From IMG/VR virus record IMGVR_UViG_3300031857_000005, positions 186,001 to 250,000 of that record: a stretch of 64,000 bases of DNA; one strand, 5' to 3'. Below the pieces are notes generated by a model, which saw only the letters and a list, made by a program, of their open reading frames with translations, was not told the DNA's origin and ran no database searches. Shown here in pieces: positions 2-13,920 of the stretch; position 1 is the first letter of the stretch; every line of letters starts with the position of its first letter. The translations under genes were made by a program, and so were the position numbers.

Positions 2-2095
2 GAATTAAAAATCGCATTAAACGTTGGTGATATATTATATTCGGCAGGAACTGGAACCGACTCAACTGTAAGAGTAGACAATGGAAATTTTGCAAATGGT
101 AACTGCTCAATTGTTGCTGGAGGAAGTGGAAATATTAGTGATAGTCAATATTCAACAATCGGTGGTGGATGTAATAACACAATAAATAATTTTACAACAA
201 ATTCTAACTATTATTCGGTAGTTGGGAATTTAATTGGTGGGGGTAATCGTAATACAATTGATTCTAATACGTTAAATGATGCCGATGTTGGTGGATCAGT
301 AATTGGTGGTGGTTATGTAAATCAATTGATTTCACCTTTTTATGGTTTCAACACGGTTAATGGTGGGGTTTTAAATAGAACATTTTTTGATTATAGTACA
401 ATTGGTGGTGGAGCAATCAATGTTAACTTAGATTCGTTTACAACAATCGGTGGTGGAGCATTTAATACAAACTCAAGTTATACATCAACAATCGGTGGTG
501 GTAATAATAATACAATTGGAACTTTATCTTCTTATTATAATGATCCTATTATTGGTCAAACTATAGGTGGTGGATCTTGTAATACAATGTCATCTTATAG
601 TGCTCAGTATTATAATGGTGGTAGTACAATTAGTGGTGGATATTGTAACACAACAGTTTCTTCATATTATGGAGGGCAAACTATATCAGGAGGGTTTAAT
701 AATATAACATCAAGTGATTATGCAACAGTTGGTGGAGGGGTTAGAAACACATCAAGTGGTTATTATTCAACTGTAAGTGGTGGGATTAACAATACATCAA
801 GTTGTGGTGGTTCATTTATTGGTGGTGGTTGTAACAACACATCAAGTTGTAATTATTCTACCGTAAGTGGAGGTTATAGAAATACATCAAGTTGTTGTAA
901 TTCAACAATAGGTGGTGGTAGAAGTAACACAGTAAGTTCTTGTTATTCAACTGTTAGTGGGGGTCGTAACAACGTATCCGGAATTAGCGGAACTATATCA
1001 GGAATTTATGATCAAACATATAATGGAGGAACATTTAGTGGTTATTATGGGTCATATTCACCAACCTCAACATCTTCAGGGTTTGGTAATGGAGGAACAT
1101 TCTCATTTAATTTTAATACGGGAACATTGTCTAACGTTTATGTTAACACAATTGGTCAAAGTTATGTTCAAGGAGATACGTTATTATTTGACGGTACTTT
1201 ATTTGGTGGATCAAGTGGTACTGATGATGTGACAATTAAAATTAATGTGACATCAAGTGGTAATAATTCTACCGTAAGTGGAGGTTATTGTAATACATCA
1301 ATTGGTAGTAGTTCAACAGTAAGTGGTGGTAAAAGAAACACATCAAGTGGTAGTTATTCAACAATTGGAGGTGGTAATGTTAACACATCAAGTTGTTATT
1401 ACTCAACCGTTGGTGGTGGTAGAAATAACACGTCAAGCGATTATTGTTCAACCATTGGTGGTGGTTTTAATAATAAAATTAATCCAGCATCATCCGATAG
1501 TGGTACTATATACGCATCAACAATAGGAGGAGGATCTTGTAATACAATCGGAACATTATCGGCATATTATGATGTATATGGTGCAACAATAGGTGGGGGA
1601 ACTTGTAATACAGTTGGGACATTATCCTCTTATTGTGGTGTGTATAGCTCAACAATTGGTGGAGGTTCCTTTAATATAATATCATCCTACAGTGGATACT
1701 ATGAAATGTATGGTAATACAATAGCTGGTGGTACTTTTAATACAACGGTATCTTCAGAATACAACGGACAAACAATTGGTGGAGGTCGTGGTAATGTAAC
1801 AAGGTATAATTATTCAACTGTAAGTGGGGGTAGAACTAACACATCAAGTGGTTATTATTCAACAATTGGTGGTGGTATAAATAACACATTAATAAATGGT
1901 TGTTCGGCAATACTTGGAGGAATATGTAATACGTCACAACACGATTGTTCATTTATTGTTGGTAGTGGTATATGTAGTACTGCCGCAAACACAACACACG
2001 TAAATTGTCTACATTTCAGTAACATACCTACATCGTCAGCAGGACTTGCACCAGGTACTGTATATAGTGATTCGTGTGTATTAAAAATAGTATAA
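2..2095 (+). CDS. Gly/Ser/Thr-rich beta-repeat fibre/adhesin-like virion protein (5' end lies outside the window)
   Basis: Frame is open from base 2 (ELKIALNVGDILYSAGTG...), so the TTG at 326 is not the true start. About 15-aa repeats S-T-[IV]-[GS]-G-G-x-x-N-T (YadA/AIDA-like beta-roll). C-terminal IPTSSAGLAPGTVYSDSCVLKIV resembles common phage fibre termini. Confidence 0.7.
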   Translation, partial: ELKIALNVGDILYSAGTGTDSTVRVDNGNFANGNCSIVAGGSGNISDSQYSTIGGGCNNTINNFTTNSNYYSVVGNLIGGGNRNTIDSNTLNDADVGGSVIGGGYVNQLISPFYGFNTVNGGVLNRTFFDYSTIGGGAINVNLDSFTTIGGGAFNTNSSYTSTIGGGNNNTIGTLSSYYNDPIIGQTIGGGSCNTMSSYSAQYYNGGSTISGGYCNTTVSSYYGGQTISGGFNNITSSDYATVGGGVRNTSSGYYSTVSGGINNTSSCGGSFIGGGCNNTSSCNYSTVSGGYRNTSSCCNSTIGGGRSNTVSSCYSTVSGGRNNVSGISGTISGIYDQTYNGGTFSGYYGSYSPTSTSSGFGNGGTFSFNFNTGTLSNVYVNTIGQSYVQGDTLLFDGTLFGGSSGTDDVTIKINVTSSGNNSTVSGGYCNTSIGSSSTVSGGKRNTSSGSYSTIGGGNVNTSSCYYSTVGGGRNNTSSDYCSTIGGGFNNKINPASSDSGTIYASTIGGGSCNTIGTLSAYYDVYGATIGGGTCNTVGTLSSYCGVYSSTIGGGSFNIISSYSGYYEMYGNTIAGGTFNTTVSSEYNGQTIGGGRGNVTRYNYSTVSGGRTNTSSGYYSTIGGGINNTLINGCSAILGGICNTSQHDCSFIVGSGICSTAANTTHVNCLHFSNIPTSSAGLAPGTVYSDSCVLKIV

Positions 2096-2152
2096 AAAAT
2101 AATATCAAAAAACATTTCTTAAGAGGAATAAATAAATAAAAAACAAATAAAA

Positions 2153-2344
2153 ATGGAAAACAGAGAAATTAAATTATTGTTTAAATATGAGACACCAGTT
2201 ACTATTGGTGAACATAAAGTAATTGCAATTAGACAAACACCAAAAGGTATTAGATTTAGAACTGAAAATGGTCCTATTTTAAAGGAGGTTGAACGTAAAG
2301 AAACATGGACTGAACAAGAATTGCATGATTTATTGTTGAGTTAA
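2153..2344 (+). CDS. hypothetical protein (63 aa)
   Basis: ATG with A-rich leader; fills the intergenic gap. Confidence 0.6.
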   Translation: MENREIKLLFKYETPVTIGEHKVIAIRQTPKGIRFRTENGPILKEVERKETWTEQELHDLLLS

Positions 2345-2396
2345 TATTTTAAAAAAAATACATATACTTTTACAAACATATTATTAAAATTGTAAT

Positions 2397-3140
2397 ATGT
2401 TTGTAACTGTATGTAATAAAGAATATCTTATTGGTTTTGAGGTAATGTTAAAATCTCTTGTGGAGAATAACCCAAGAGTTATTGAGGAAGATATCCCATT
2501 CACAATTATTAGTAATGATTTAACATCAGATGATTTAATAGTTGCGAGAAAAATTCATAATAATATTTCATTAAAAACCTATGATTCATCAAAATATTAT
2601 GAAATTGATGAGTTAAAAAAACAACAGATGTCGTTTGGTGATTACGCCAAATATGAAATATTTTCTATTGAGGATGTTGATAAAATCATATTTCTTGATT
2701 CCGATACTTTAATATTAGGGAACATTGATAGATTAATTGACTCTGATTATAATTTTGGTGCTGTTAGAGAATTGTATATTGACCAATACAATACCGGAGT
2801 AATAGTCATTTCAAAGAAATATTTAAACCCTAAAATCACAAATGATTTAATCAATTTAACAAAAGTTTATGGAATAACTGAACATTCCGATCAGGATATT
2901 ATAAATCATTACTTTGAAGACGTTATTAAAGATTTCCCAATTGAATATAATTTTTTAAAAACATACAATAAAAAAGTATTCCAAAACACAGGGTTACCTA
3001 AGTACATCAAAATATTACACTACATAGTTAAAAAACCTTGGCAACAAAAAGAATTAGTGTCTTTAGAAGAAGGGACTTTATGGACTGAAAGATATTGGTT
3101 TGATTATTATTCAAAAATACTTAAACTAAAAAATGATTAA
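2397..3140 (+). CDS. glycosyltransferase family 8
   Basis: IIFLDSDTLI (DxD), YNTGVIVI, SDQDIIN, YNF, ILHYIVKKPW motifs. Confidence 0.85.
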   Translation: MFVTVCNKEYLIGFEVMLKSLVENNPRVIEEDIPFTIISNDLTSDDLIVARKIHNNISLKTYDSSKYYEIDELKKQQMSFGDYAKYEIFSIEDVDKIIFLDSDTLILGNIDRLIDSDYNFGAVRELYIDQYNTGVIVISKKYLNPKITNDLINLTKVYGITEHSDQDIINHYFEDVIKDFPIEYNFLKTYNKKVFQNTGLPKYIKILHYIVKKPWQQKELVSLEEGTLWTERYWFDYYSKILKLKND

Positions 3141-4041
3141 AAGACATTACGATAAAAGTGAGTTATTAAACTACGTTGAGTTAGATAAGGATACAACAAC
3201 ATTAGAGAATAAAGTAATATTATTACATTTAGATTCTTTTTGTTTGGGGGATACTATTTGTTTTGCGTCATTTATTGATTCATTTATAGATTACCACAAC
3301 CCAAAAAAAGTTATTGTATCCACATTTTTTCCTCATTTATTAATATCAAATAATGAAAAATGTGAAATTATTAACGCCAATCAACAAAAAAAATTAACAA
3401 TAGATAAATTAATTGATGTTGGTTATGATAAAAATAATATGTCACATACTTTGGGTGGTATGTTGTATGCAACCAAAGATACAATGATGATACCACAATC
3501 AACCGAACCAAAAAAACCAACATTAATACCAAAATTTAAAAACGTTAAATCAAATAAAATAACTATTGCTCCCGAATCATTAAAATCAATTGCTCAATGG
3601 GATAGAGATGGTTGGCAGTTAGTTGTTGATTCTTTGGTTAATTCTGGTTTTGAGGTTTTTAATGTCTCTTACGAAGATACATTAAAATTAAATAATGTTA
3701 AAGGATATCACGGATTTGATGATATCAACGTCTCGTTAAATCACATATTAGAATCAAGATTGTTTATTGGGCTATCTTCGGGATTATCTTGGTTGGCATG
3801 GGCGTATGATGTTCCAGTTGTTATGATTTCAGGTTTTACAAAAGAACACAATGAATTTGATTGTTTTAGAGTTATTAATAAAAACGTTTGTAATGGGTGT
3901 TTTAATTTATTTCCAAATATTAGCACTAAATGTCCGATATTTTTAAATACAGAAAGAGAAAACGAATGTCATAAAAAAATAACACCAAAAATGGTTATAG
4001 AACAAATAAACAAGGCAATTATGTTTACAAACAATAAATAA
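3133..4041 (+). CDS. autotransporter O-heptosyltransferase-like (TibC/Aah, GT-B) glycosyltransferase
   Basis: LGDTICF; FIGLSSGLSWLAWAYDVPVVMISGFT; four-Cys cluster CNGC-x10-C-x11-C resembling the TibC iron finger. Confidence 0.75.
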   Translation: MIKRHYDKSELLNYVELDKDTTTLENKVILLHLDSFCLGDTICFASFIDSFIDYHNPKKVIVSTFFPHLLISNNEKCEIINANQQKKLTIDKLIDVGYDKNNMSHTLGGMLYATKDTMMIPQSTEPKKPTLIPKFKNVKSNKITIAPESLKSIAQWDRDGWQLVVDSLVNSGFEVFNVSYEDTLKLNNVKGYHGFDDINVSLNHILESRLFIGLSSGLSWLAWAYDVPVVMISGFTKEHNEFDCFRVINKNVCNGCFNLFPNISTKCPIFLNTERENECHKKITPKMVIEQINKAIMFTNNK

Positions 4042-4058
4042 AATATTATTATAAATTT

Positions 4059-4946
4059 ATGGAAAAAAAATATTCAATATTTCATATAGAAGGTGGGTTA
4101 GGAAAACATATATGTGCAACTGCGGTTGCAAAATGTATTAAGAATAATTTCCCTGAAAGAGAGTTGATTGTGGTATGTGCTTACCCTGAAATATTTTTAA
4201 ATTTAGAATTTATTGATAGAGTGTATAGAATTGGTAACACACCATATTTCTACGATGACTTCATTAATGATAAAGATTCAAAAATATTTAAACATGAACC
4301 TTATTTCACTGATGAACACATACATAAAAAATTACCTCTAATTGAGAATTGGTGCAAACTGTTTAATTTGAATTATTTAGGAGAGAAACCTGAATTAGTA
4401 TTTAATCTTAGGCAAAAACAAACAGGTATTAACAAATGGAAAAGAGATAAACCTGTGATGGTAATCCAAACAAACGGAGGACCCTTAAATGATCAACCTT
4501 ATCCATATTCTTGGACTAGAGATATTCCGTATGATGTTGCTCAACATTTAGTTAATTATTTTTCACCACAATATCACATAATTCAAATATGTAGAAATGA
4601 AAAAAATGCAATTGCAGGATGTGAAGTTATTACAGAACAAATGTCTAACATGGAATTGTTTTCACTATTGTTTATGTCTGAAAAAAGAATTTTAATTGAT
4701 TCTTGTTTGCAACACGCATCTGCGGCAATGGGAATACCATCAACTGTTTTATGGATAGGTACATCGCCAGTTATGTTTGGTTATAACACACACAAAAATA
4801 TTATTGCAAAATTACCTAACACGGTGAAATTACCTGATAGTTATTTGTTTGATTATAATTTTAATGGGTTAACACATGAATGTCCTTTAATAGATACCGA
4901 TATTTTTGATATCGACGAAATAATATATAATATAAATAATTTTTAA
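4059..4946 (+). CDS. GT9-like (GT-B fold) glycosyltransferase
   Basis: N-terminal IEGGLGKHICAT; C-terminal LIDSCLQHASAAMGIPSTVLW matches the GT9 DSG..H.A.A.G.P motif. Confidence 0.7.
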   Translation: MEKKYSIFHIEGGLGKHICATAVAKCIKNNFPERELIVVCAYPEIFLNLEFIDRVYRIGNTPYFYDDFINDKDSKIFKHEPYFTDEHIHKKLPLIENWCKLFNLNYLGEKPELVFNLRQKQTGINKWKRDKPVMVIQTNGGPLNDQPYPYSWTRDIPYDVAQHLVNYFSPQYHIIQICRNEKNAIAGCEVITEQMSNMELFSLLFMSEKRILIDSCLQHASAAMGIPSTVLWIGTSPVMFGYNTHKNIIAKLPNTVKLPDSYLFDYNFNGLTHECPLIDTDIFDIDEIIYNINNF

Positions 4947-4947
4947 T

Positions 4948-5769
4948 ATGGTAGAAAAGATATTTTTTCAAAGCTCATTACCAAGAGCTGGTTCAACATT
5001 ATTACAAAACATAATGGGGCAAAATCCTGATTTTTATGTTACACCAACTTCAGGTGTTTTAGAACTTGTATATGCCGCAAGAAACAATTACACTAACTCG
5101 CCTGAATTTAAGGCTCAAGATTCTAAATTAATGAAAGATGGGTTCATATCATTTTGTAAAAATGGTATGGAGGGATTTTTTAATGGTGTAACAGATAAAC
5201 CTTATGTTTTAGATAAAAGTAGAGGGTGGGGAGTTCACTATGGTTTTTTAAATTCTTTTTATCCTGAACCTAAAATAATTTGTATGGTTAGAGATCCAAG
5301 ATCAATTTTTGCGTCAATGGAGAAAAATTTTAGGAAAAGTCAACATTTAGATTCAGGATTGGTTAATCATGCTCAAATGGCAGGAACAACGACTGAAAAG
5401 AGAATTGATATATGGGCTCAATCACAACCTGTTGGTTTGGCTTTAGAAAGATTACAACAAATTTTTAGAGAAGGGGTAAACGACAAAATATTGTTTGTTA
5501 GATTTGAGGATTTAACCTCAAGTCCTAAAACAGAAATAGAAAGAATTTATACCTATTTAGGATTACCGTATTATGAAGGTCATGACTTTAATAACGTAAC
5601 TCAAATTACAAAAGAAGATGATTCAATTTATGGTATTTACGGTGATCATGTCATTAAACAACGAATAGAACCTACCAAAAAAGATTATCGGGATATCTTA
5701 GGTGATGATGCTTCTAATTGGATAAAAAACAGATACAAATGGGTATTTAATCAATTTGGTTATTTTTAA
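4948..5769 (+). CDS. PAPS-dependent sulfotransferase
   Basis: 5'-PSB motif SSLPRAGSTLL; 3'-PB motif MVRDPRSIFAS; VRFEDL. Confidence 0.85.
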   Translation: MVEKIFFQSSLPRAGSTLLQNIMGQNPDFYVTPTSGVLELVYAARNNYTNSPEFKAQDSKLMKDGFISFCKNGMEGFFNGVTDKPYVLDKSRGWGVHYGFLNSFYPEPKIICMVRDPRSIFASMEKNFRKSQHLDSGLVNHAQMAGTTTEKRIDIWAQSQPVGLALERLQQIFREGVNDKILFVRFEDLTSSPKTEIERIYTYLGLPYYEGHDFNNVTQITKEDDSIYGIYGDHVIKQRIEPTKKDYRDILGDDASNWIKNRYKWVFNQFGYF

Positions 5770-5774
5770 TTATT

Positions 5775-6233
5775 ATGGAGAATAAAATTTATTGGTTTAC
5801 CGGTCAGCCAGGTGCGGGAAAGACAGTTTTGTCTTTAATGTTAAAAACGGTTTTAGAACTTGACAATAGTAATAAAGTATTTCATATTGATGGAGATGAA
5901 TTAAGAAGTCTTTTTAATAATCAAAAATACGGTAGAGAAGGTCGTGAAGAGAATATAAAACGAGCACAAGATATTGCTAAATTTATATTAGCTCAAGGAC
6001 ATAGTGTTGTTGTTAGTTTGGTTGCACCATACAAAGAACTTAGAGAAAGTCTTAAACAAGAGTTGGGTAATTTGCTTGTTGAGTTTTATGTTCACACTAC
6101 AGATATTAGAGGTAGAGAACATTTTCACACCGACGAATATGAAAAACCAACAGAAAATTATTTAGATATTAATACAACTAATGTTGACCCACAAATATCA
6201 CTAAACCAAATAATAGAACACATTTCAAAATGA
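5775..6233 (+). CDS. cysC: adenylyl-sulfate (APS) kinase
   Basis: WFTGQPGAGKT P-loop, IDGDELR, R.ENI.R, VSLVAPY, YEKP. Confidence 0.9.
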   Translation: MENKIYWFTGQPGAGKTVLSLMLKTVLELDNSNKVFHIDGDELRSLFNNQKYGREGREENIKRAQDIAKFILAQGHSVVVSLVAPYKELRESLKQELGNLLVEFYVHTTDIRGREHFHTDEYEKPTENYLDINTTNVDPQISLNQIIEHISK

Positions 6234-6694
6234 ATTGGGAAGTAAAAAATCACGGAGGAGAACCTACAACAAACGAAAGTAAAAAATATGCAATATTTGT
6301 TGGTAGATACCAACCATACCATTATGGACATATTGAGTTAATACAACAAAAATTAAATCAAGGAATTCCTGCTCTTATTATGGTTAGGGATATTGAACCT
6401 GACGAAAAAAATCCATTTACCACTGAACAAACGGTAAAGATGATTGAGGAATATCATAACTCAAAAGGTGATGATGTTAAAGTTGTTATTATTCCTGATA
6501 TTGAATCTGTTAATTACGGTAGAGGTGTTGGGTATGAAATAAATGAATTCACACCACCAGATAATATTGGATTCATATCTGCAACAGGAATAAGAAACTC
6601 AATTGCTAAAGGTGACGACAAATGGAAAGATATGGTGGACGAATCAATACAAGATTATATAATTAATTTTTTAACATATGCAAATACAAAGTAA
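6230..6694 (+). CDS. small HIGH-superfamily nucleotidyltransferase (NadM/Sat-like; candidate minimal ATP sulfurylase)
   Basis: GRYQPYHYGH (HxGH) and ISATGIR motifs; ATGA overlap with cysC. Confidence 0.7.
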   Translation: MNWEVKNHGGEPTTNESKKYAIFVGRYQPYHYGHIELIQQKLNQGIPALIMVRDIEPDEKNPFTTEQTVKMIEEYHNSKGDDVKVVIIPDIESVNYGRGVGYEINEFTPPDNIGFISATGIRNSIAKGDDKWKDMVDESIQDYIINFLTYANTK

Positions 6695-7146: not shown

Positions 7147-7641
7147 ATGGAGCAATCAATTACTATACAAAGTATTAATTATGACGGTGAACTTGCTAAT
7201 ATCTTATTTAAACCAGATATTAGCGAAACCGTATATAATTTAGGTGATCAGTTTTTACCTTTTGTGTTTAATTCAAACACAATTAACCCTAATTTAGAAG
7301 TATTTGGGACATATACTATATTAATTTTATTTAATAAATGCCCATATTTTTTAAATGTCCCAAGACTTACTCCTACACCGACACCTACAAATACGCCAAC
7401 TAGAACACCAACACCTACACCAACACCTACGATTACACCTACACCTACGTTCGATCCTTGTAAGGTACCAACACCAACACCAACGGTTACTACAACGCCT
7501 ACGATTACACCTACAAATACACCAACTCCAAGTGTGACTTGTACAAATCCTTGTGGTTGTCCTGAACCAAGTAAAACACCAAAACCAAGTAAAACACCAA
7601 AACCGACACCTACTTGTACAAGTCCTTGTGGTTGCCCATAA
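7147..7641 (+). CDS. Pro-Thr repeat (mucin-like) virion-associated protein with Cys-rich C-terminus
   Basis: Long (PT)n tract; CTNPCGCP and CTSPCGCP motifs; TATTTATA motif upstream. Confidence 0.7.
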
Positions 7642-7694: not shown

Positions 7695-9632
7695 ATGATA
7701 CATCAAATTTCAATAACAGGAGTAACAGGAACTCCACCATATTCAATATCGGTATGTGATTCAACATACACATATTGTTATTTGGTTACAGGTTCAACAA
7801 CAATACCACCAACATTTACTTTTGATGTTCCATCACCTTTAGATGGAGTTAATAATTTAATTGTAAAAATAACTGATTCTACAGGATGCGAATACTTTGA
7901 ACCTTATAGTTGTCCTCCTACACCGACACCAACACCTACTCTAACACCGACACCAACACCTACCCCAACCGATTTGTGTTATTGTTTAATGGCAGTTAAT
8001 TCATCCATGATGGATGGTTCGTTTGATTATATAGATTGTGATGGATTATCACAATTAAATATTCATGTCCCAAGTGGAATAACATATTATACTTGTGGAT
8101 CTAACCCGACAAACATAATTAATTTATCAATCGGAATAGGTGATTTATGTTCTTTATCCAGTTGTAATCCACCTTTACCTTCATTATCGGCAACACCAAC
8201 TCCTACTCCCACACCTTCGTCATTACCTTTTGCGTTTATTTCAGTTTGGTCGGCATCAACTACAATTGAACTTCCGTATTCACCAACTGGAACTTATTCA
8301 GGAATAATAGATTGGGGTGATGGTAATACATCTGTTAACTCATATGCAAATAGAACTCATACATATTCGATAACAGGTGATTATACTGTAACAATTACAG
8401 GTACAATTGAGGGTTGGGATTTTAATAATTATGCGACATCTTATAAAAACAATATAAAAGAAATATTAAGGTGGGGTCCACTAAAAGGAGAATCAGGTTC
8501 AAACAATGGCATGTTCTATGGTTGTCAAAATTTAATTATAACAGGTGTAACAGATACTATTAATTTAATTGGAATAACAAATTTGAGTAGTATGTTTTTT
8601 GGTTGTACTAGTTTAACTACCGTAAATAATATGGATAGTTGGGATGTATCATCTGTTAATAATATGTCGGGTATGTTTACATTGACATCTAATTTCAATC
8701 AACCAATAGGAAGTTGGGATGTTTCAAATGTTACAAATATGGCATCTATGTTCTCGTTATCCACAAACTTTAACCAAAACATCGGAAGTTGGGATGTTTC
8801 AAACGTTACCAATATGTTGGCTATGTTTTTAGCCGCGGCAAATTTCAATCAACCAATAGGAGGATGGGATGTTTCAAATGTTATCAATATGTCAGCTATG
8901 TTCGCAGGTTCTCAAAATTTCAATCAACCAGTAGGAAGTTGGGATGTTTCAAATGTTACCAATATGTCGTCTATGTTTGGTAATGCAACAAACTTCAATC
9001 AGACAATTGGGGGTTGGGATGTGTCAAATGTTACCAATATGGGTAATATGTTTGGTAATGCAACAAACTTTAACCAAAACATCGGAAGTTGGGATGTTTC
9101 AAATGTTACCGATATGAATGGTATGTTTTTATCGGCAATAAACTTTAACCAAAACATCGGAAGTTGGGATGTTTCAAATGTTACCGTTATGAATGGTATG
9201 TTTAATAATGCTACAAGTTTTAACAATGGAGGTTCTCCAAGTATAAATTTATGGAATGTTTCAGGTGTGACAAATATGTCATTTACTTTTTATACCGCAA
9301 CAAATTTCAATCAACCAATAGGAGGATGGGACGTATCTAATGTAACAAATATGGAAAATATGTTATCATTGGCAACAGTTTTTGATCAACCAATCGGAGG
9401 ATGGGATGTTTCATCAGTAACTAATATGAGTTTTATGTTAAATGGTACGTCATTATCAACACCTAATTATGATTTACTACTCAATGGATGGGCATCATTA
9501 GGAGGTTCATTACAACCCTCAGTTAATTTTAATGCCGGTACTTCTGTATATACGATTGCAACGGCTGGTGTGAGTAGAAATTATTTGACAGGAACCAAGT
9601 TATGGAATATAACTGACGGGGGAGGAATTTAA
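7695..9632 (+). CDS. virion decoration/adhesin: PT linkers, PKD-like domain and BspA/DUF285 26-aa surface repeats
   Basis: (PT)n tracts; IDWGDG..HTYS..G.YTVTITG PKD-like motif; repeats FNQ[PN]IGxWDVSNVTNMxxMF. Confidence 0.85.
   Translation: MIHQISITGVTGTPPYSISVCDSTYTYCYLVTGSTTIPPTFTFDVPSPLDGVNNLIVKITDSTGCEYFEPYSCPPTPTPTPTLTPTPTPTPTDLCYCLMAVNSSMMDGSFDYIDCDGLSQLNIHVPSGITYYTCGSNPTNIINLSIGIGDLCSLSSCNPPLPSLSATPTPTPTPSSLPFAFISVWSASTTIELPYSPTGTYSGIIDWGDGNTSVNSYANRTHTYSITGDYTVTITGTIEGWDFNNYATSYKNNIKEILRWGPLKGESGSNNGMFYGCQNLIITGVTDTINLIGITNLSSMFFGCTSLTTVNNMDSWDVSSVNNMSGMFTLTSNFNQPIGSWDVSNVTNMASMFSLSTNFNQNIGSWDVSNVTNMLAMFLAAANFNQPIGGWDVSNVINMSAMFAGSQNFNQPVGSWDVSNVTNMSSMFGNATNFNQTIGGWDVSNVTNMGNMFGNATNFNQNIGSWDVSNVTDMNGMFLSAINFNQNIGSWDVSNVTVMNGMFNNATSFNNGGSPSINLWNVSGVTNMSFTFYTATNFNQPIGGWDVSNVTNMENMLSLATVFDQPIGGWDVSSVTNMSFMLNGTSLSTPNYDLLLNGWASLGGSLQPSVNFNAGTSVYTIATAGVSRNYLTGTKLWNITDGGGI
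8590..9440 (+). repeat. tandem 78-bp (26-aa) DUF285 repeats, about 11 units
   Basis: Near-identical units, e.g. aaactttaaccaaaacatcggaagttgggatgtttcaaa near 8765, 9065 and 9141. Confidence 0.85.
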
Positions 9633-9679: not shown

Positions 9680-10927
9680 ATGAAAATTTTCATCCAAATC
9701 GCTTCTTATAGAGATCCCCAACTTATACCAACAATTAAAGATTGTATTGATAAATCAAAAAAACCTGAAAATTTAAGATTTGGTATTTGTAGACAATTTC
9801 ATCCTGAAGATGGTTTTGATAATTTAACAGAATATGAGAATGATGATAGATTCAGAATTTTAAATATTCCATATCAAGAATCAACAGGCGTGTGTTGGGC
9901 AAGAAACCAAGTACAACAATTATATAAAGGAGAAAAATACACTCTACAGTTAGATTCTCATATGAGATTTGAACAAGATTGGGATGATACTTTAATTAAA
10001 ATGATTAAAGGATTACAAAAGAATGGCTATAAAAAACCATTATTAACTGGTTATGTCTCATCATTTGATCCTGAAAATGATCCTCAAGGTAGGGTTACCG
10101 ATCCGTGGAGAATGACATTTGATAGATTTACACCTGAAGGTGTTGTATTCTTTTTACCTGAAGTAATTCCTAATTGGAGGGAATTTAGTGAACCAATACC
10201 TTCAAGATTTTACTCCGCACATTTTGCATTTACATTAGGGGAGTTTTCTAAAGAAGTTCAACATGATCCTGAATACTATTTTCACGGTGAAGAAATTTCA
10301 ATTGCAGTAAGAGCATACACTCATGGATATGATTTATTTCATCCACATAGAGTTGTTATTTGGCACGAATACACAAGGAAGGGTAGAACTAAACAATGGG
10401 ACGATGATAAAGAGTGGTATAAAAAAAACGAATCTTGTCATAAAAAGAATAGACAAATACTTGGTATTGATGGAGAATCTTATGAAGGGGATTTAGGTAA
10501 ATATGGTTTTGGTACCGAAAGGACAATTAGAGATTATGAAAAATATTCAGGTATCCTATTTTCTAAAAGAGCAATACAACAATATACAATAGATAAAAAT
10601 TATCCTCCTAATTCATACGATTATGAAACTGAAGAACAATGGTTAGATAGTTTTACAACAATATTCAAACATTGTATTGATATATCATTTGATGGAGTTC
10701 CTGAAAATGATTACGATTTTTGGGTTGTTGCATTTCATAATGAAAAAGATGAAACTTTATTTAGACAAGATGCCGACTCAAACGAAATAAATAGAATGAT
10801 GCAAGATCCTGACAGATACTGTAAAATATGGAGAGAATTCCACACAAAAGAAAAACCTAAGTATTGGGTTGTGTGGCCGTATAGTAAATCAAAAGGATGG
10901 TGTCCAAGATTAACAGGTAATTTATAA
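9680..10927 (+). CDS. GT60 / GlcNAc-transferase family protein (Skp1-hydroxyproline/polypeptide alpha-GlcNAc transferase-like)
   Basis: IFIQIASYRDP, G.CWAR, LQLDSHMRF (DSH), FHGEE, AYTHGYD, WHEY motifs. Confidence 0.8.
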   Translation: MKIFIQIASYRDPQLIPTIKDCIDKSKKPENLRFGICRQFHPEDGFDNLTEYENDDRFRILNIPYQESTGVCWARNQVQQLYKGEKYTLQLDSHMRFEQDWDDTLIKMIKGLQKNGYKKPLLTGYVSSFDPENDPQGRVTDPWRMTFDRFTPEGVVFFLPEVIPNWREFSEPIPSRFYSAHFAFTLGEFSKEVQHDPEYYFHGEEISIAVRAYTHGYDLFHPHRVVIWHEYTRKGRTKQWDDDKEWYKKNESCHKKNRQILGIDGESYEGDLGKYGFGTERTIRDYEKYSGILFSKRAIQQYTIDKNYPPNSYDYETEEQWLDSFTTIFKHCIDISFDGVPENDYDFWVVAFHNEKDETLFRQDADSNEINRMMQDPDRYCKIWREFHTKEKPKYWVVWPYSKSKGWCPRLTGNL

Positions 10928-10932
10928 TTTAT

Positions 10933-11643
10933 ATGGTAACATTTAATGATGTAAAAATAGCTGATGTTGGGTATTATATAAATTTGGATAGTAGGGTTGA
11001 CAGAAAAGATAACCTTGAGTCACAGTTTAATAAATTTAACATAAAGGGGGTTAATAGATTTTCGGCATTTTCAAGTTACCCAAGTAATCCCTCAAATTGT
11101 AAAAAAAGTCATTATCAATTATTTGAATTGTTTTTACAATCAAATTACAATACTATGTTAGTATTAGAAGATGATTGTAAGTTTTTAGATTTTTTAAAGG
11201 ATGAGTCAACCGAAATTTTTGATAAAATTTTAAATACTGATTGGGATTTATTTTGGTTAGGATGTAGAAATAGAAAACCACCAAAAAATTATATTAATAA
11301 TTGTTATTTTACCTCATCAACTTCCGGAGCTCAATCTTACATTATAACAAAAAGATTTGTTGAGTATCTATTATCTACTTTCCCTATTGAACCTAACGAT
11401 AATTTAAGGAACACATCAATTGATGAACTACTGTGTTTATCAATATATGATATTGATGTGGTTAATAACCCAAATAAATATAATTTTTATAATTTAGATC
11501 AACCTTTAGATAATCTACAAACTAAATTTAAATCATTGTGTTATGAAAAGGCACTTACAACACAATATCTTTCATATAGTGATTTATGGGGTACTACTAC
11601 CGATTTAGAATATTATATGATATCATCACACCCAAAACAATAA
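10933..11643 (+). CDS. glycosyltransferase family 25
   Basis: YYINLDSRVDRK, CKKSH, LVLEDD, AQSYII motifs. Confidence 0.8.
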   Translation: MVTFNDVKIADVGYYINLDSRVDRKDNLESQFNKFNIKGVNRFSAFSSYPSNPSNCKKSHYQLFELFLQSNYNTMLVLEDDCKFLDFLKDESTEIFDKILNTDWDLFWLGCRNRKPPKNYINNCYFTSSTSGAQSYIITKRFVEYLLSTFPIEPNDNLRNTSIDELLCLSIYDIDVVNNPNKYNFYNLDQPLDNLQTKFKSLCYEKALTTQYLSYSDLWGTTTDLEYYMISSHPKQ

Positions 11644-11647
11644 TAAT

Positions 11648-12241
11648 ATGAACGGACACTTTATTTACAAAAATTTAATTATTAGTCAACATCCAAATGT
11701 TGGGGAAAAGTTTAAAACACTTATTGACGAATACAAACCATCAAGAGTTTTAGAAATAGGAACTGCGGATGGCGGATTAACATTATTAATAAGAGATTTA
11801 TTAGATAGTGTGGGATTAACTAATACAATAGTACGAACTTATGATGTTAATGAACAAAAAAATTTAAAGTTAAAAGAAAGAAATATTGAGATAATCACAA
11901 AAGATGTTTTTAATTATCCATATTCAGATTTAGAATATCCTGATGAAATCAGAGACTTTATACAAAGTAATGGTAAAACTTTAGTTCTTTGCGATGGAGG
12001 GAGTAAAAAAAATGAATTTAGATTATTATCTCAATTTTTAAAATATGGTGATATTATTATGGCTCACGATTATGCACCAAATGAAAATTATTTTAATGAA
12101 AATATAAAAGATAAAATATGGAATTGGTTAGAAATACAAGATTTTGATATTAATGAAAGTTGTTTAACTTATAATCTTAAACCATATATGGAAGATGAAT
12201 TTCGTTCTGTTGTATGGGTATGTAAAATAAAAGAACAATGA
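11648..12241 (+). CDS. class I SAM-dependent methyltransferase (CmcI/sugar O-methyltransferase-like)
   Basis: VLEIGTADGG motif I; LVLCDGG; IIMAHD. Confidence 0.75.
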   Translation: MNGHFIYKNLIISQHPNVGEKFKTLIDEYKPSRVLEIGTADGGLTLLIRDLLDSVGLTNTIVRTYDVNEQKNLKLKERNIEIITKDVFNYPYSDLEYPDEIRDFIQSNGKTLVLCDGGSKKNEFRLLSQFLKYGDIIMAHDYAPNENYFNENIKDKIWNWLEIQDFDINESCLTYNLKPYMEDEFRSVVWVCKIKEQ

Positions 12242-13920
12242 TTACATTAGTAACTGGTTTATGGGATATTGGTAGAGGTGATTTACAGGAAGGTTGGTCA
12301 CGATCATATCAACACTATTTAGGTAAGTTTGAAGAACTACTAAAAGTAGATAGTAACCTTATTATTTTTGGTGATAAAGAGTTACAAGATTTTGTATCTC
12401 AAAGAAGACAGGTTGAAAACACTCAATTTATTTTGAGGGATTTGAATTGGTTTAAAAATAACGAATATTTCCAATTAATACAAACTATACGAACAAATCC
12501 TGATTGGTTTAACCAAGTTGGGTGGTTAAAGGACTCAACTCAATCTAAATTAGAAATGTATAACCCTTTGGTTATGTCTAAAATGTTTTTACTTAATGAT
12601 GCAAAAATTTTAGATAAATTTAATTCAGATAAACTATTTTGGGTTGATGCCGGTTTAAGTAATACCGTACATATGGGTTATTTTACGCATGATAAAGTTA
12701 TGGATAAAATAGATAAATTATCTGACAAATTTTTATTTATTTGTTTTCCATATAACGCAGAAACTGAAGTTCATGGATTCAAGTATGAAGAAATGAAACG
12801 ATTAACAAACTCAACACCTGATATTGTTGCTCGCGGAGGATTCTTTGGTGGGGATAAGGATTTAATATCACAAATGAATAGTTTGTATTATGGGATATTA
12901 ATTGACACCCTTAAACGAGGTTTTATGGGTACTGAAGAAAGTTTATTTACAATATTAACATACCAATACCCTAACATAATTGATTACTGTGAAATAGAAT
13001 CTAATGGATTAGTTTATAAATTTTTTGAGGATGTTAAAAACAATTTAGTTGTAATAAAAAACTTTGACTCAAAACCAACAATCGTTAAAACTAATTTAGA
13101 AATTAACTCAAATGGGATTGGTTTATATATTATAACATTTAATTCACCAAATCAATTTGAGACATTAATCCAATCAATGTTGAACTATGATACTGATTTT
13201 ATCACAAGAACCAAAAAGTTTTTACTTGATAATTCAACAGATACATCAACAACCCCAAGGTATTTGGAACTTTGTGAACAATATGGTTTTACTCACATAA
13301 AAAAAGATAATATTGGTATAACTGGTGGAAGACAATTTATTGCGGAACATTTTAATGAACAAGAAGATTTAGGTTATTATTTCTTCTTTGAGGACGATAT
13401 GTTATTTCACTCAGGTAAAACCGATGTGTGTAAAAATGGTTTTGGTAGGTATGTTAAAAAACTATTTACCAAATCTTTAAACATACTAAAAAGAGAATCT
13501 TTTGATTTCTTAAAATTAAATTTTACAGAATTTTATGGTTCTAATGATAAACAATGGTCTTGGTATAATGTTCCCCAAGATTTTAGACAATCCCATTGGC
13601 AGAACAATCCAAGGTTACCACAACAAGGGTTGGATCCAAATTCACCAAACACAGAATTCAAATATATTAAATCATTACAGGGGTTACCATATGCGAGTGG
13701 AGAAATCTATTTGTGTAACTGGCCGATTCTAATGTCAAAAGAAGGTAATTATAAGTGTTATTTAAAAACAAAATTTGATCATCCATTTGAACAAACTTTA
13801 ATGTCCCAATGTTTCCAAGAAACCATTAAGGGTAATATCAATCCGGGTTTATTATTAATAACCCCAACTGAACACAATCGTTTCGATCATTATGAATCCT
13901 CATTAAGAAAAGAATGTTAA
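12238..13920 (+). CDS. HtrL/YibB-like domain fused to a GT-A (GT2-like) domain
   Basis: N-terminal TLVTGLWDIGR, FWVDAG, GGFFGG, TEESL; C-terminal domain with GITGGR and YFFFEDD. Confidence 0.7.
   Translation: MITLVTGLWDIGRGDLQEGWSRSYQHYLGKFEELLKVDSNLIIFGDKELQDFVSQRRQVENTQFILRDLNWFKNNEYFQLIQTIRTNPDWFNQVGWLKDSTQSKLEMYNPLVMSKMFLLNDAKILDKFNSDKLFWVDAGLSNTVHMGYFTHDKVMDKIDKLSDKFLFICFPYNAETEVHGFKYEEMKRLTNSTPDIVARGGFFGGDKDLISQMNSLYYGILIDTLKRGFMGTEESLFTILTYQYPNIIDYCEIESNGLVYKFFEDVKNNLVVIKNFDSKPTIVKTNLEINSNGIGLYIITFNSPNQFETLIQSMLNYDTDFITRTKKFLLDNSTDTSTTPRYLELCEQYGFTHIKKDNIGITGGRQFIAEHFNEQEDLGYYFFFEDDMLFHSGKTDVCKNGFGRYVKKLFTKSLNILKRESFDFLKLNFTEFYGSNDKQWSWYNVPQDFRQSHWQNNPRLPQQGLDPNSPNTEFKYIKSLQGLPYASGEIYLCNWPILMSKEGNYKCYLKTKFDHPFEQTLMSQCFQETIKGNINPGLLLITPTEHNRFDHYESSLRKEC

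What the first reader, a model, noticed from the sequence alone, without database searches (positions are those of the whole stretch)
2..13920. Candidate phage virion glyco-sulfation system: six GT-like genes, a methyltransferase and a PAPS module interleaved with their likely protein substrates
Seen: two enzyme blocks (2397-7118 and 9680-13920) flank two Pro-Thr mucin-like virion proteins and follow a Ser/Thr/Gly-repeat fibre. Two of the enzymes belong to families known to glycosylate proteins (TibC/Aah-like, GT60). Others extend or decorate glycans (GT8, GT9-like, GT25, HtrL-GT2, methyltransferase, sulfotransferase). None of the enzymes shows an obvious signal peptide. Established: virion glycosylation is known in some mycobacteriophages and giant viruses. 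Inference: this phage coats its fibres with a sulfated, methylated O-glycan (shield, mucin mimicry or adhesion). I do not know of a characterised sulfated phage-virion glycan.
Basis: partly seen in the sequence, partly recalled or inferred. Interest (0 to 1): 0.85.

Follow-up and report, generated by a model that had tools for sequence, protein, structure and literature searches.

The report
Phage fibre glycosylation and sulfation island
A roughly 300-kb freshwater phage carries a variable gene island in which tail-fibre-like proteins sit among sugar-adding, methyl-adding and sulfate-adding enzymes, so it probably decorates its own fibres with modified sugars, which nobody has yet shown by experiment.

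Summary
All 16 genes are at the stated coordinates. Six are glycosyltransferase-like: GT8, a TibC/Aah-like GT9, a second GT9-fold enzyme, GT60, GT25 and HtrL. There is also a weak methyltransferase, a sulfotransferase and an APS kinase. The "PAPS module" has no canonical ATP sulfurylase; an NMNAT-like nucleotidyltransferase and a DUF2061 membrane protein take its place.

Relatives from more than 900 viral contig matches split the region into two modules.
- **Module A:** 15-residue-repeat fibre, GT9b and sulfotransferase, with or without the PAPS genes. It recurs in many unrelated genomic contexts.
- **Module B:** Pro-Thr-linker proteins, GT60, a hypervariable set of glycan-tailoring genes, HtrL, then a baseplate-anchor-like protein. 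This frame is conserved next to PolB.

None of the enzymes or candidate substrates has a signal peptide or membrane segment. The distant relative XacN1 shares the GT60 and HtrL genes and has Schiff-stained virion glycoproteins.

My best reading (confidence 0.55) is cytoplasmic glycosylation, methylation and sulfation of the phage's own fibres. Whether sulfate goes on sugar or on tyrosine is open. The main rival is masking of the host's LPS receptor. I rate it a new variant of a known kind. The island continues at least 13 kb upstream of the window.

The parts
2..2095 (+). C-terminal 698 residues of fibre B. The full protein is 966 aa and starts upstream of the window. It is a trimeric-fibre-like protein of 15-residue beta-roll-type repeats and the candidate substrate of module A.
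   Evidence: The full-length ORF is seen in L086:4248-7148. Similar fibres give weak YadA_head/UspA1/LbR hits. Family members carry Peptidase_S74, and one is named a tail fiber domain protein.
2153..2344 (+). 63-aa ORF of unknown role between the fibre and GT8.
   Evidence: No family hit. In L032 and L057 its homologue lies next to PolB instead.
2397..3140 (+). GT8 glycosyltransferase. It travels with the fibre, GT9a and GT9b.
   Evidence: Pfam Glyco_transf_8 E=1.9e-21. Synteny.
3133..4041 (+). TibC/Aah-like GT9 enzyme (GT9a), a relative of the protein O-heptosyltransferases of autotransporters. It lacks the first ~76 positions of that family's profile.
   Evidence: PDB TibC 4RAP E=1.8e-16 with four aligned Cys. 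TIGR04414 E=2.5e-35, 122 bits, below the cut-off of 200.
4059..4946 (+). GT9-fold glycosyltransferase (GT9b), the constant partner of the sulfotransferase and of fibre-repeat proteins.
   Evidence: AF2 pLDDT 91.4. Foldseek hits: 3TOV 5.8e-11, WaaF, WaaC, TibC 8.5e-7. Adjacent to the sulfotransferase in 46 of 66 distinct loci.
4948..5769 (+). PAPS-dependent sulfotransferase; acceptor unknown.
   Evidence: Sulfotransfer_3 E=3e-23. NoeE E=6e-9. Profile against PDB: TPST1 E=5.5e-11 is the top hit. The PRxGST motif and the VR[DN] block are invariant among relatives; reading them as the PAPS-binding 5'-PSB and 3'-PB motifs is my interpretation.
5775..6233 (+). APS kinase (CysC-like, short).
   Evidence: APS_kinase E=5.4e-19, covering profile positions 4-110 of 152. 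NCBIfam adenylyl-sulfate kinase.
6230..6694 (+). NMNAT/NadM-like HxGH nucleotidyltransferase. From its context it is a candidate non-canonical sulfate adenylyltransferase.
   Evidence: CTP_transf_like E=1e-7. NMNAT hits. Co-occurs with APSK in phage cassettes. In Flavobacteriales it sits as APSK-NT at the head of a locus holding a CysQ-like gene, Wzx, three sulfotransferases and Wzy.
6678..7118 (+). DUF2061 membrane protein, a constant member of the APSK-NT cassette. It is the only protein in the region with a TM-like segment.
   Evidence: DUF2061 E=1.2e-12. Hydropathy scan. Synteny.
7147..7641 (+). PT1: conserved ~75-aa N-terminal domain followed by a Pro-Thr tract with CGCP motifs. Relatives add variable C-terminal domains.
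   Evidence: Sequence and relatives. PT tract scan.
7695..9632 (+). PT2: Cys-rich N-terminal domain, PT linker, second Cys-rich domain, PT linker, then DUF285/PARCEL repeats. Members of this family lie directly upstream of GT60 in most relatives.
   Evidence: DUF285 E=2e-106. PARCEL repeat. Family architecture. Adjacency statistics.
9680..10927 (+). PF11397 GlcNAc-family glycosyltransferase (the family I know as CAZy GT60, which contains polypeptide GlcNAc transferases). It is the conserved anchor gene of module B.
   Evidence: PF11397 E=1.9e-71. phrog_24687 E=3e-170. 367 matching stretches in viral contigs; the 80 best are 72-100% identical. 45-49% identity in XacN1, Xoo-sp13, CM1 and RAS14.
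10933..11643 (+). GT25 glycosyltransferase, in the variable slot between GT60 and HtrL.
   Evidence: Glyco_transf_25 E=2.3e-9. Present in only a minority of relatives.
11648..12241 (+). Probable SAM-dependent (CmcI/rhamnosyl-O-methyltransferase-like) methyltransferase, in the variable slot.
   Evidence: RMNT_CmcI E=1.1e-3, below threshold. Methyltransferase families recur in this slot in relatives.
12238..13920 (+). Two-domain enzyme. The N-terminal half is HtrL/YibB-like. The C-terminal half is unassigned, with GT-A-like motifs only. It is the second conserved anchor of module B.
   Evidence: HtrL_YibB E=5e-18. TIGR02192. The C-terminal half has no Pfam hit. XacN1 ORF330 is 41% identical over the full length.
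13957..14373 (+). p138: a BppU-N-like baseplate-anchor domain. In most relatives the same domain is followed by PT/Thr-rich linkers and variable distal domains; here it stands alone.
   Evidence: AF2 pLDDT 76.8. Foldseek BFVD hits to BppU N-terminal, tail and minor tail proteins, and PDB hits to phage NF5 and TP901-1 baseplates. Relatives.

Best explanation
The region is the 3' two-thirds of a hypervariable island of about 30 kb in a jumbo myovirus of about 300 kb. The island encodes virion fibres together with cytoplasmic enzymes that modify them after translation. It has two modules.

**Module A.**
- It comprises fibre A and fibre B, GT8, the TibC-like GT9a, GT9b, the sulfotransferase, APS kinase, the NMNAT-like transferase and DUF2061. 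A second sulfotransferase-GT9b pair lies upstream of the window.
- A GT9-fold enzyme attaches a sugar to Ser/Thr of the 15-residue beta-roll repeats of the fibres. This parallels how TibC/Aah heptosylate autotransporter beta-helices.
- GT8 and the second GT9 enzyme add further sugars or further sites.
- The sulfotransferase then sulfates the sugar, or a fibre tyrosine. It uses PAPS made on the spot by the phage APS kinase, with APS supplied by the NMNAT-like enzyme acting as sulfate adenylyltransferase.

**Module B.**
- It comprises PT1, PT2, GT60, GT25, the methyltransferase, the HtrL two-domain enzyme and p138.
- GT60 starts O-glycans (probably HexNAc) on Thr, or on hydroxy-Pro, of the Pro-Thr linkers. 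These linkers belong to modular fibre proteins built as a conserved N-terminal anchor, a PT linker and a variable distal domain.
- The conserved HtrL enzyme and a freely exchangeable set of tailoring enzymes then extend, methylate and in relatives carbamoylate or fucosylate the glycan.

**Shown and inferred.** The gene identities, the linkage and the modular architecture are shown. Every acceptor, every donor and the virion location of PT1 and PT2 are inferred.
For: 1. **Protein-modifying families.** Two of the enzyme families are known protein glycosyltransferases.
   - GT9a is a significant TibC relative with the four-Cys motif.
   - The GT60 gene is a strong PF11397 member.
2. **Recurrence of fibre, GT9b and sulfotransferase.**
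   - They recur side by side in very different flanking contexts, including a 411-kb phage and a marine single-virus genome.
   - Fibre-repeat proteins are found only where GT9b is: 30/34 loci against 0/8, and 6/10 against 0/56, Fisher 2e-6 without phylogenetic correction.
3. **PT tracts are confined to the island.**
   - 66 of 385 genes upstream of GT60 carry a PT tract, against 0 of 92 genes beyond PolB.
   - The gene next to GT60 is a PT-family protein in 45 of 63 loci.
4. **Candidate substrates look like virion fibres.**
   - Relatives of the fibre carry the Peptidase_S74 tail-fibre chaperone.
   - p138 folds like the BppU N-terminal baseplate anchor.
   - All three PT families have conserved N-termini and variable C-termini.
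5. **No export route.** No enzyme or substrate has a signal peptide or TM segment, and no flippase, polymerase or exporter is present.
6. **Fused enzymes and a protein methyltransferase in relatives.**
   - Relatives fuse the TibC-like domain with GT4, GT32 and FkbM methyltransferase domains in one 1447-aa protein.
   - Some relatives place a SET-domain gene between GT9b and the sulfotransferase. SET domains are, to my knowledge, protein-lysine methyltransferases.
7. **Only glycan genes in the variable slot.** The GT60-HtrL interval holds only glycan-building and glycan-tailoring genes, 61 clusters across 80 loci.
8. **XacN1.** It shares GT60 and HtrL and has periodic-acid-Schiff-positive virion proteins. 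Its authors proposed that the phage glycosyltransferases make them (PMC5852040). Its neighbouring 3313-aa baseplate-adjacent protein has a PT tract.
9. **PAPS supply.** In Flavobacteriales, APSK-NT heads a locus that also holds a CysQ-like gene, three sulfotransferases, Wzx and Wzy. This supports a PAPS-supply role for the pair.
Against: - No experiment shows that any of these proteins is modified or is in the virion.
- GT9b's closest structures are the LPS heptosyltransferases WaaF and WaaC, ahead of TibC.
- GT9a scores below the Aah/TibC equivalog cut-off and lacks the N-terminal part of the profile.
- Fibre genes and receptor-modifying genes can also be linked for other reasons, such as receptor masking.
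- The NMNAT-like protein gives no ATP sulfurylase hit. In a Thermodesulfobacteriota genome checked, of the group labelled Dadabacteria or Thermodesulfobacteriota, it has no sulfur context.
- Conserved Ser, Thr and Asn of the fibre repeats may be structural rather than acceptor sites.
- The window's own p138 has no PT tract.
- The association counts are not corrected for shared ancestry.
Confidence: 0.55

Rival explanations
1. Receptor masking or host-envelope remodelling. The GT9, GT8 and GT25 enzymes and the sulfotransferase modify the host's LPS core or a surface polysaccharide during infection. Possible purposes are superinfection exclusion or stopping progeny from sticking to debris. The enzymes travel with fibre genes because each receptor-modifying set is matched to the receptor-binding fibre next to it.
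For: - GT8, GT9, GT25 and HtrL are classical LPS-core families.
- GT9b's best structural matches are WaaF and WaaC.
- The PAPS genes have close relatives in Flavobacteriales polysaccharide loci.
- Linkage of a receptor-binding protein to a receptor-masking gene is a known pattern, for example T5 llp next to its receptor-binding gene (my own knowledge, not tested here).
Against: - There is no flippase, ligase, polymerase or any membrane protein apart from DUF2061.
- GT60 and TibC-like enzymes are protein-directed families.
- A SET-domain gene sits inside the module in relatives.
- PT tracts are confined to the island.
- XacN1 virions carry glycoproteins.
- Remodelling newly made LPS would act slowly in a lytic cycle (inference).
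Confidence: 0.2
2. This rival concerns the sulfation step only and is not exclusive of the main explanation. The sulfotransferase puts sulfate directly on tyrosine (or Ser/Thr) of the fibre repeats, as TPST and RaxST do. It does not sulfate a glycan, so there is no 'sulfated O-glycan'.
For: - A profile of the phage sulfotransferases hits TPST1/TPST2 first among all solved structures (E=5.5e-11), well ahead of heparan 3-O-sulfotransferase, the one carbohydrate sulfotransferase I recognise in that list (5e-3).
- Fibre B is 6.3% Tyr. Across the fibre family Tyr is the commonest residue (26%) two positions before the T-[IV]-G-G-G core.
Against: - The single sequence also hits the carbohydrate sulfotransferase NoeE (E=6e-9).
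- In my reading of the TPST alignment, the stretch where I recall TPST's catalytic Glu (the GEET segment) is TPTSG in the phage enzymes, so that residue appears not to be conserved.
- The repeat Tyr lacks the acidic neighbours typical of TPST sites.
- A glycosyltransferase (GT9b) is almost always adjacent, which suggests sequential action.
Confidence: 0.35
3. DNA hypermodification. The GT60-to-HtrL array next to PolB builds glycans on modified bases of the phage DNA to evade restriction.
For: - The array abuts PolB here and lies near the DNA polymerase and RNase H in XacN1.
- Phage glycosyltransferases that build glycans on DNA bases are documented (PMC13326640, title and abstract; Pyle et al. 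2024, title as cited in PMC12619734).
Against: - The searches run on the window recognised no hydroxymethylase or base-modifying gene next to the array. Not every ORF of the window was searched against Pfam.
- PT-linker and fibre genes are interleaved with the enzymes.
- The PF11397 and TibC families are protein-directed.
- The paper on glycosylated 5-hydroxycytosine (PMC13326640) does not mention XacN1-like phages.
Confidence: 0.05
4. The PT tracts are plain flexible linkers and the fibres are unmodified. The enzymes make a free or lipid-linked sulfated, methylated oligosaccharide, or a small-molecule product, with some other role in infection.
For: - PT linkers occur widely as spacers (general knowledge).
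- No acceptor has been demonstrated.
- Relatives carry sugar-nucleotide biosynthesis genes in the array.
Against: This does not explain why PT tracts occur only beside GT60. It also does not explain why fibre-repeat proteins occur only beside GT9b, or why protein-directed enzyme families are used.
Confidence: 0.1

Closest known systems
Aah/TibC bacterial autotransporter heptosyltransferases (BAHT) with AIDA-I/TibA
   Same: - A cytoplasmic GT9 enzyme is encoded next to a long beta-solenoid repeat protein rich in Ser/Thr/Gly.
- GT9a is a significant sequence relative of TibC and keeps the four iron-finger Cys.
   Different: - The neighbour is a phage fibre with 15-residue beta-roll repeats, not a 19-residue autotransporter passenger.
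- GT9a lacks the first ~76 positions of the profile and scores below the equivalog cut-off.
- The constant partner of the fibres is the more divergent GT9b, not the TibC-like enzyme.
- Donor sugar unknown.
Virus-encoded virion glycosylation: mycobacteriophages (Freeman et al. [quoted passage not shown]
   Same: - Virus-encoded soluble glycosyltransferases and methyltransferases lie beside structural genes.
- Relatives carry multi-domain GT+GT+MT proteins. From my own knowledge these resemble the multi-domain PBCV-1 enzyme A064R.
- XacN1 shares orthologous GT60 and HtrL genes and has Schiff-positive virion proteins.
   Different: - Different enzyme families.
- The acceptors proposed here are fibres and PT linkers, not capsid or tail-tube C-termini.
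- A PAPS/sulfotransferase module is added.
- The tailoring set is hypervariable.
- Nothing is shown experimentally for this lineage.
GT60 polypeptide alpha-GlcNAc transferases of protists (Dictyostelium Gnt1 on Skp1 hydroxyproline; mucin-type GlcNAc transferases of Dictyostelium and Trypanosoma cruzi). From my own knowledge of the family.
   Same: - Strong membership of the same Pfam family, PF11397, with a DSH (DxH) motif.
- Thr/Pro-rich mucin-like tracts are encoded next door.
   Different: - The context is bacterial-virus and cytoplasmic.
- No prolyl hydroxylase was identified.
- No solved structure matches by sequence.
- Acceptor untested.
Sulfated polysaccharide loci of Flavobacteriales (APS kinase, NMNAT-like gene, CysQ-like gene, Wzx, three sulfotransferases, Wzy)
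   Same: The same APSK-plus-NMNAT-like gene pair is present (NT 70-79% identical), together with Sulfotransfer_1/Sulfotransfer_3-family sulfotransferases (Pfam hits).
   Different: - The phage cassette has no Wzx, Wzy or CysQ.
- It adds DUF2061.
- It is embedded among fibre genes.

Membership tests
BAHT (Aah/TibC) protein O-heptosyltransferases: gene 3133-4041 | Significant homology to TibC across the nucleotide-sugar-binding domain | tested here: met
   phmmer against PDB: 4RAP_A E=1.8e-16, query residues 143-294 aligned to TibC 219-385.
BAHT (Aah/TibC) protein O-heptosyltransferases: gene 3133-4041 | Four-cysteine iron-finger motif | tested here: met
   CNGC...KCP...NEC aligns with TibC CYGC...WCP...FEC. 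It is conserved in the three close homologues.
BAHT (Aah/TibC) protein O-heptosyltransferases: gene 3133-4041 | Full-length equivalog score (TIGR04414 cut-off 200 bits) | tested here: not met
   122.2 bits. The match starts at profile position 77 of 374.
BAHT (Aah/TibC) protein O-heptosyltransferases: gene 3133-4041 | ADP-heptose donor and Ser acceptors in a beta-helical repeat protein | not testable with these tools
   Only the adjacency to a repeat fibre is seen.
GT9 fold: gene 4059-4946 | GT-B fold most similar to GT9 structures | tested here: met
   AF2 pLDDT 91.4. Foldseek: 3TOV 5.8e-11, 1PSW 1.9e-10, WaaC, TibC. Sequence-level searches are negative. hhalign against GT9a gives only 21% probability.
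GT60 / PF11397: gene 9680-10927 | Pfam gathering score | tested here: met
   241.8 bits against a cut-off of 21.
GT60 / PF11397: gene 9680-10927 | Polypeptide (Thr or hydroxyproline) acceptor | not testable with these tools
   Supported only by adjacency to PT-tract proteins.
PAPS-dependent sulfotransferase: gene 4948-5769 | Family score, plus conserved blocks that I read as the 5'-PSB (PRxGST) and 3'-PB PAPS-binding motifs | tested here: met
   Sulfotransfer_3 83.6 bits against a cut-off of 27. Both blocks are invariant among relatives.
Protein-tyrosine sulfotransferase (TPST): gene 4948-5769 | Catalytic Glu in the GEET segment and an acidic Tyr acceptor context | tested here: not met
   This is the best solved relative (E=5.5e-11). 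By my reading of the printed alignment, TPTSG aligns where TPST has GEET; that the catalytic Glu lies in GEET is from memory. The repeat Tyr has no acidic neighbours.
APS kinase (CysC): gene 5775-6233 | Pfam/NCBIfam match and P-loop | tested here: met
   APS_kinase 69.2 bits against a cut-off of 21.1, though only profile positions 4-110 of 152 are matched. It scores below the NCBIfam equivalog cut-offs.
ATP sulfurylase (Sat or CysDN): gene 6230-6694 | Homology to a known sulfate adenylyltransferase | tested here: not met
   Only NMNAT, PPAT and cytidylyltransferase-like hits by Pfam, NCBIfam and a PDB profile search. The proposed role rests on gene context alone.
Seroconversion-type host O-antigen modification (GtrABC-like) | Membrane-embedded flippase and glycosyltransferase | tested here: not met
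   No TM-like segments in any glycosyltransferase. No such families were hit.
BppU-N-like baseplate anchor: gene 13957-14373 | Fold similarity to BppU N-terminal domains or baseplate proteins | tested here: inconclusive
   Model pLDDT 76.8. BFVD hits to BppU-N and tail proteins at E 1e-4 to 1e-3 with TM about 0.5. PDB baseplate hits at E=2e-3, mixed with Ig-like hits.
Phage tail fibre: gene 2-2095 | Family members carry tail-fibre hallmarks | tested here: met
   Homologues found through fibre A's C-terminal region carry Peptidase_S74, LbR and UspA1 repeats, and one is named a tail fiber domain protein. This protein itself has no Pfam or PHROG hit.

The most novel reading that the evidence does not exclude
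These jumbo phages run a self-contained cytoplasmic modification factory. It includes a previously unrecognised NMNAT-derived class of sulfate adenylyltransferase that supplies PAPS. Its product is tail fibres coated with sulfated, methylated glycans. The hypervariable coat would itself be the ligand. It would imitate the sulfated polysaccharides that the presumed Flavobacteriia hosts capture with their outer-membrane glycan-uptake machinery, so the host would pull the phage onto its own surface.
Probability: 0.1. Interest if true: 0.92.

Novelty: new variant of a known kind. Interest (0 to 1): 0.72.

Why it matters
Virion glycosylation by phage-encoded enzymes is documented for very few phages. 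I found no report of sulfated phage proteins or of phage relatives of the autotransporter heptosyltransferases.

**Abundance.** The modules are common in viral contig collections:
- 367 GT60 matches.
If they do modify fibres, post-translational coating of receptor-binding structures is a widespread and rapidly diversifying trait of large aquatic phages.

**Consequences.**
- It would bear on host recognition, resistance to proteases and grazers, and stickiness to organic matter.
- It would mean that fibre sequence alone under-determines host range.

**Testable pairs.** The island offers enzyme-substrate pairs that can be tested directly: fibre with GT9b and the sulfotransferase, and PT tract with GT60.

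**Side result.** The NMNAT-like gene paired with APS kinase in phages and in Flavobacteriales would be a new route to APS, if confirmed.

Tried and rejected
- **Family searches.** PHROGs, Pfam and NCBIfam gave nothing for fibre B, PT1 or p138. Fibre A gave only sub-threshold noise.
- **Searches against isolate phages.** tblastn of p138 and fibre A found nothing. The low-complexity filter may have hidden the fibre.
- **Sequence searches of PDB.** Nothing for GT9b, HtrL or GT60.
- **HtrL C-terminal half.** No Pfam hit, so the 'GT2' label is not confirmed.
- **S-SKS1 context.** The neighbourhood of its distant sulfotransferase homologue is uninformative.
- **NT gene in the Dadabacteria/Thermodesulfobacteriota group.** In the one genome checked (labelled Thermodesulfobacteriota) it has no sulfur neighbours. 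Three contig look-ups failed because the gene boundaries were not exact.
- **ATP sulfurylase homology of NT.** Rejected.
- **Literature.**
  - Searches for sulfated phage fibres and for phage TibC homologues found nothing relevant.
  - The paper on DNA glycosylation does not mention XacN1-like phages.
  - Two papers were not held.
- **Possible identity with moraphages.** The lineage may be the 'moraphages' (PMC12619734: freshwater, up to 307 kb, PolB, four core glycosyltransferase groups, Flavobacteriia hosts predicted). I could not check this because their sequences are not in the tools.

Full report
**What the window is**

The window has about 31% G+C. It encodes a tail sheath, tail tube, baseplate hub and wedge, a family B DNA polymerase, helicases, SSB, a UvsX-like recombinase and ribonucleotide reductase. 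Identical copies of the region lie on viral contigs of up to 304 kb, so this is a jumbo myovirus. Its polymerase is only about 23-25% identical to that of any isolate.

A published freshwater lineage, the "moraphages", matches this description. Those phages are 200-307 kb, encode PolB, have four core glycosyltransferase groups and are predicted to infect Flavobacteriia (PMC12619734). I could not verify that the two lineages are the same.

**Checking the observation**

Assignments that pass curated thresholds:
- GT8
- Sulfotransfer_3
- APS kinase
- DUF2061
- DUF285/PARCEL repeats
- PF11397 GlcNAc (the family I know as CAZy GT60)
- GT25
- HtrL_YibB

Other assignments:
- **Gene 3133-4041** is a genuine relative of the autotransporter heptosyltransferase TibC (PDB 4RAP, E=1.8e-16), with the four iron-finger cysteines aligned. 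It scores below the Aah/TibC equivalog cut-off and lacks the first ~76 profile positions.
- **Gene 4059-4946** has no sequence family. Its AlphaFold model (pLDDT 91) matches GT9 structures first: 3TOV, WaaF, WaaC, then TibC.
- **The methyltransferase** is only a sub-threshold CmcI-like hit.
- **The C-terminal half of the HtrL protein** has no Pfam hit.
- **Gene 6230-6694** is NMNAT/NadM-like, not an ATP sulfurylase.

Candidate substrates:
- Pro-Thr tracts are found in only two ORFs of the whole window, 7147-7641 and 7695-9632.
- The fibre at 2-2095 is the C-terminal part of a 966-aa protein. It is built of 15-residue repeats, N-T-[AS]-S-G-x-Y-S-T-[IV]-[GS]-G-G-x-x.
- No protein except DUF2061 has a membrane-like segment or a signal-peptide-like N-terminus.

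**The island is larger than the finding**

Upstream of the window the same contig encodes, in order:
1. an 818-aa protein with a TPTPTPTP tract;
2. a 1513-aa fibre-like protein;
3. a second sulfotransferase (55% identical);
4. a second GT9b (51% identical);
5. fibre A (959 aa);
6. fibre B, whose C-terminal part is the window's first gene.

**Two modules, from comparison with relatives**

I fetched 80 loci centred on GT60 (from 367 matching stretches) and 80 centred on the sulfotransferase (from at least 577). I then mapped every gene of the region onto them.

*Module B* is a conserved frame: [PT-family protein] - GT60 - [0-8 variable genes] - HtrL - p138 family - PolB.
- The variable slot holds 61 gene clusters across the 80 loci.
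- A Pfam census of 48 of these clusters found only genes for building or tailoring glycans. These were FkbM and other methyltransferases, GT10, GT34, GT25, GT2, a PLOD-type GT, carbamoyltransferase, DegT aminotransferase, nucleotidyltransferase and epimerase.
- The gene just upstream of GT60 belongs to the PT1 or PT2 family in 45 of 63 distinct loci and has a PT tract in 40 of them. None of 92 genes beyond PolB has a PT tract.

*Module A* is mobile.
- Fibre, GT8, GT9a and GT9b travel together.
- The sulfotransferase, APS kinase, NT and DUF2061 form an accessory cassette. In some relatives it is inverted and flanked by GT9b and a 1447-aa enzyme that fuses FkbM, GT32, GT4 and TibC-like GT9 domains.
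- Among 66 distinct sulfotransferases, GT9b lies within two genes in 46, and a fibre-repeat protein within six genes in 37.
- In the 42 loci with enough flank the counts are: GT9b with fibre 30, GT9b alone 4, neither 8, fibre alone 0.
- The same trio appears in a 411-kb phage among Laminin_G_3 fibre proteins. In a marine single-virus genome GT9b and the sulfotransferase are again neighbours.
- These counts are not corrected for shared ancestry. The flanking genes differ widely, however.

**Are the candidate substrates virion proteins?**

- **Fibre family.** Relatives found through fibre A's C-terminal region often carry the Peptidase_S74 tail-fibre chaperone, left-handed beta-roll and UspA1-type repeats. 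One is annotated as a tail fiber domain protein.
- **PT families.** PT1, PT2 and p138 each have a conserved N-terminal domain, then a PT- or Thr-rich linker, then a variable distal part. I read this as the layout typical of exchangeable fibres.
- **p138.** The model (pLDDT 77) resembles BppU N-terminal baseplate-anchor domains and the baseplate proteins of phages NF5 and TP901-1. E-values are modest, 1e-4 to 2e-3.
- **This phage's own p138** lacks the linker and distal part.
- **PT1 and PT2** have only this architectural argument.

**Experimental anchor**

Xanthomonas phage XacN1 has GT60 (48% identity) and the HtrL two-domain enzyme (41% identity). They lie in one cluster with a carbamoyltransferase and a GT9 gene, beside baseplate genes. 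Its virions contain Schiff-positive proteins, and its authors proposed that the phage glycosyltransferases make them (PMC5852040). The neighbouring 3313-aa protein has a PPPSPSPTPTPTTTP tract.

**The sulfation branch**

- The sulfotransferase keeps invariant PRxGST and VR[DN] blocks, which I read as its PAPS-binding motifs.
- Its acceptor is open. The best solved relatives are the protein-tyrosine sulfotransferases (E=5.5e-11 with a profile). In my reading of that alignment, TPTSG stands where TPST has the GEET segment, which I recall holds its catalytic Glu.
- NCBIfam points weakly to the carbohydrate sulfotransferase NoeE.
- In the 42 well-flanked loci APS kinase co-occurs with NT and with DUF2061, in 14 of 17 cassettes each.
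- In Flavobacteriales genomes the NT homologue (70-79% identical) follows an APS kinase. The pair heads a locus with a CysQ-like phosphatase, Wzx, three sulfotransferases and Wzy.
- I therefore infer that NT supplies APS.
- Against this, it resembles only NMNAT-type enzymes. In a Thermodesulfobacteriota genome checked it stands without sulfur genes.

**Mechanism proposed**

- **Module A:** a GT9-fold enzyme glycosylates Ser/Thr of the fibre repeats. GT8 and the second GT9 enzyme extend the glycan or add sites. The sulfotransferase then sulfates the sugar or a tyrosine, using phage-made PAPS.
- **Module B:** GT60 starts O-glycans on the PT linkers. HtrL and the exchangeable tailoring enzymes finish them, with methylation in this phage.
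- **Shown:** gene identities, linkage, modular protein architecture, and the absence of export signals or export genes.
- **Inferred:** every acceptor and donor, the virion location of PT1 and PT2, and the biological role.
- I suggest the role is a variable surface coat under diversifying selection. I suggest this because the tailoring set turns over so fast between relatives.

**Rivals**

- **Receptor masking (the most serious rival).** LPS-type enzymes matched to the neighbouring receptor-binding fibre would explain the linkage. They would also explain GT9b's similarity to WaaF and WaaC.
  - This fits poorly with the protein-directed GT60 and TibC families.
  - It also fits poorly with the SET-domain gene found between GT9b and the sulfotransferase in relatives.
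  - It does not explain the confinement of PT tracts to the island, or the absence of any membrane or export component.
- **DNA glycosylation.** This is suggested only by proximity to PolB.
- **Direct tyrosine sulfation.** This is a live variant of the main explanation rather than a competitor.

**Novelty and verdict**

Virus-encoded virion glycosylation is known. I found no report of a phage fibre-GT9-sulfotransferase module, of phage TibC relatives, or of sulfated virion proteins.

I rate this a new variant of a known kind. It is well supported by comparative genomics and unproven biochemically.

Noticed in passing
window 6230-6694; L246:7398-8474 (Flavobacteriales): An NMNAT/NadM-like nucleotidyltransferase is paired with APS kinase in phage sulfation cassettes. 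In Flavobacteriales the same pair sits at the head of a locus with a CysQ-like gene, Wzx, three sulfotransferases and Wzy. Phage and bacterial copies are 70-79% identical. It may be an unrecognised class of sulfate adenylyltransferase.
   Followed up: partly
L248:1826-10879 (same contig, upstream of the window): The island continues at least 13 kb upstream. It holds an 818-aa protein with a TPTPTPTP tract, a 1513-aa fibre-like protein, a second sulfotransferase (55% identical), a second GT9b (51%) and fibre A.
   Followed up: partly
L141:8409-8795 (also L136, L144, L147, L160): A 128-aa SET-domain protein (Pfam SET 3.7e-12) lies between GT9b and the sulfotransferase in some relatives. SET domains are, to my knowledge, protein-lysine methyltransferases, which hints that the module's target is a protein.
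   Followed up: partly
L050:4167-8510 (also L058, L069, L078): A 1447-aa single polypeptide fuses FkbM methyltransferase, GT32-like, GT4 and TibC-like GT9 domains. Shorter versions of 767-1497 aa occur in other relatives.
   Followed up: partly
L081:22186-25344 (XacN1 ORF325): The 3313-aa XacN1 protein lies next to baseplate wedge genes and four genes from the GT9/HtrL/GT60 cluster. It contains a PPPSPSPTPTPTTTP tract and is a candidate for one of XacN1's Schiff-positive virion proteins.
   Followed up: no
window 24682-28254: The tail sheath gene encodes 1190 aa. Sheath homology is confined to about the last 220 residues, so a very large N-terminal extension is unexplained.
   Followed up: no
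window 51013-51744: A homing-endonuclease-like gene (phrog_314, 4e-19) sits between the DnaB-like helicase and the ribonucleotide reductase small subunit.
   Followed up: no
window 2153-2344: This 63-aa ORF lies between the fibre and GT8. Its 83-85% identical homologues sit next to PolB in L032 and L057, so it moves independently of its neighbours.
   Followed up: no
L039:6714-8328, L071:12929-15380, L144:10577-11364: The p138 baseplate-anchor-like gene is duplicated in tandem in several relatives. The copies carry different linkers and distal domains.
   Followed up: no
L082/L083:9414-9995: In the 411-kb phage lineage NT and DUF2061 are 82% and 68% identical to the window's. The APS kinase there (193 aa) is too different to be found by tblastn, and the sulfotransferase is only 34% identical. 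The cassette is therefore a mosaic of parts with different histories.
   Followed up: no
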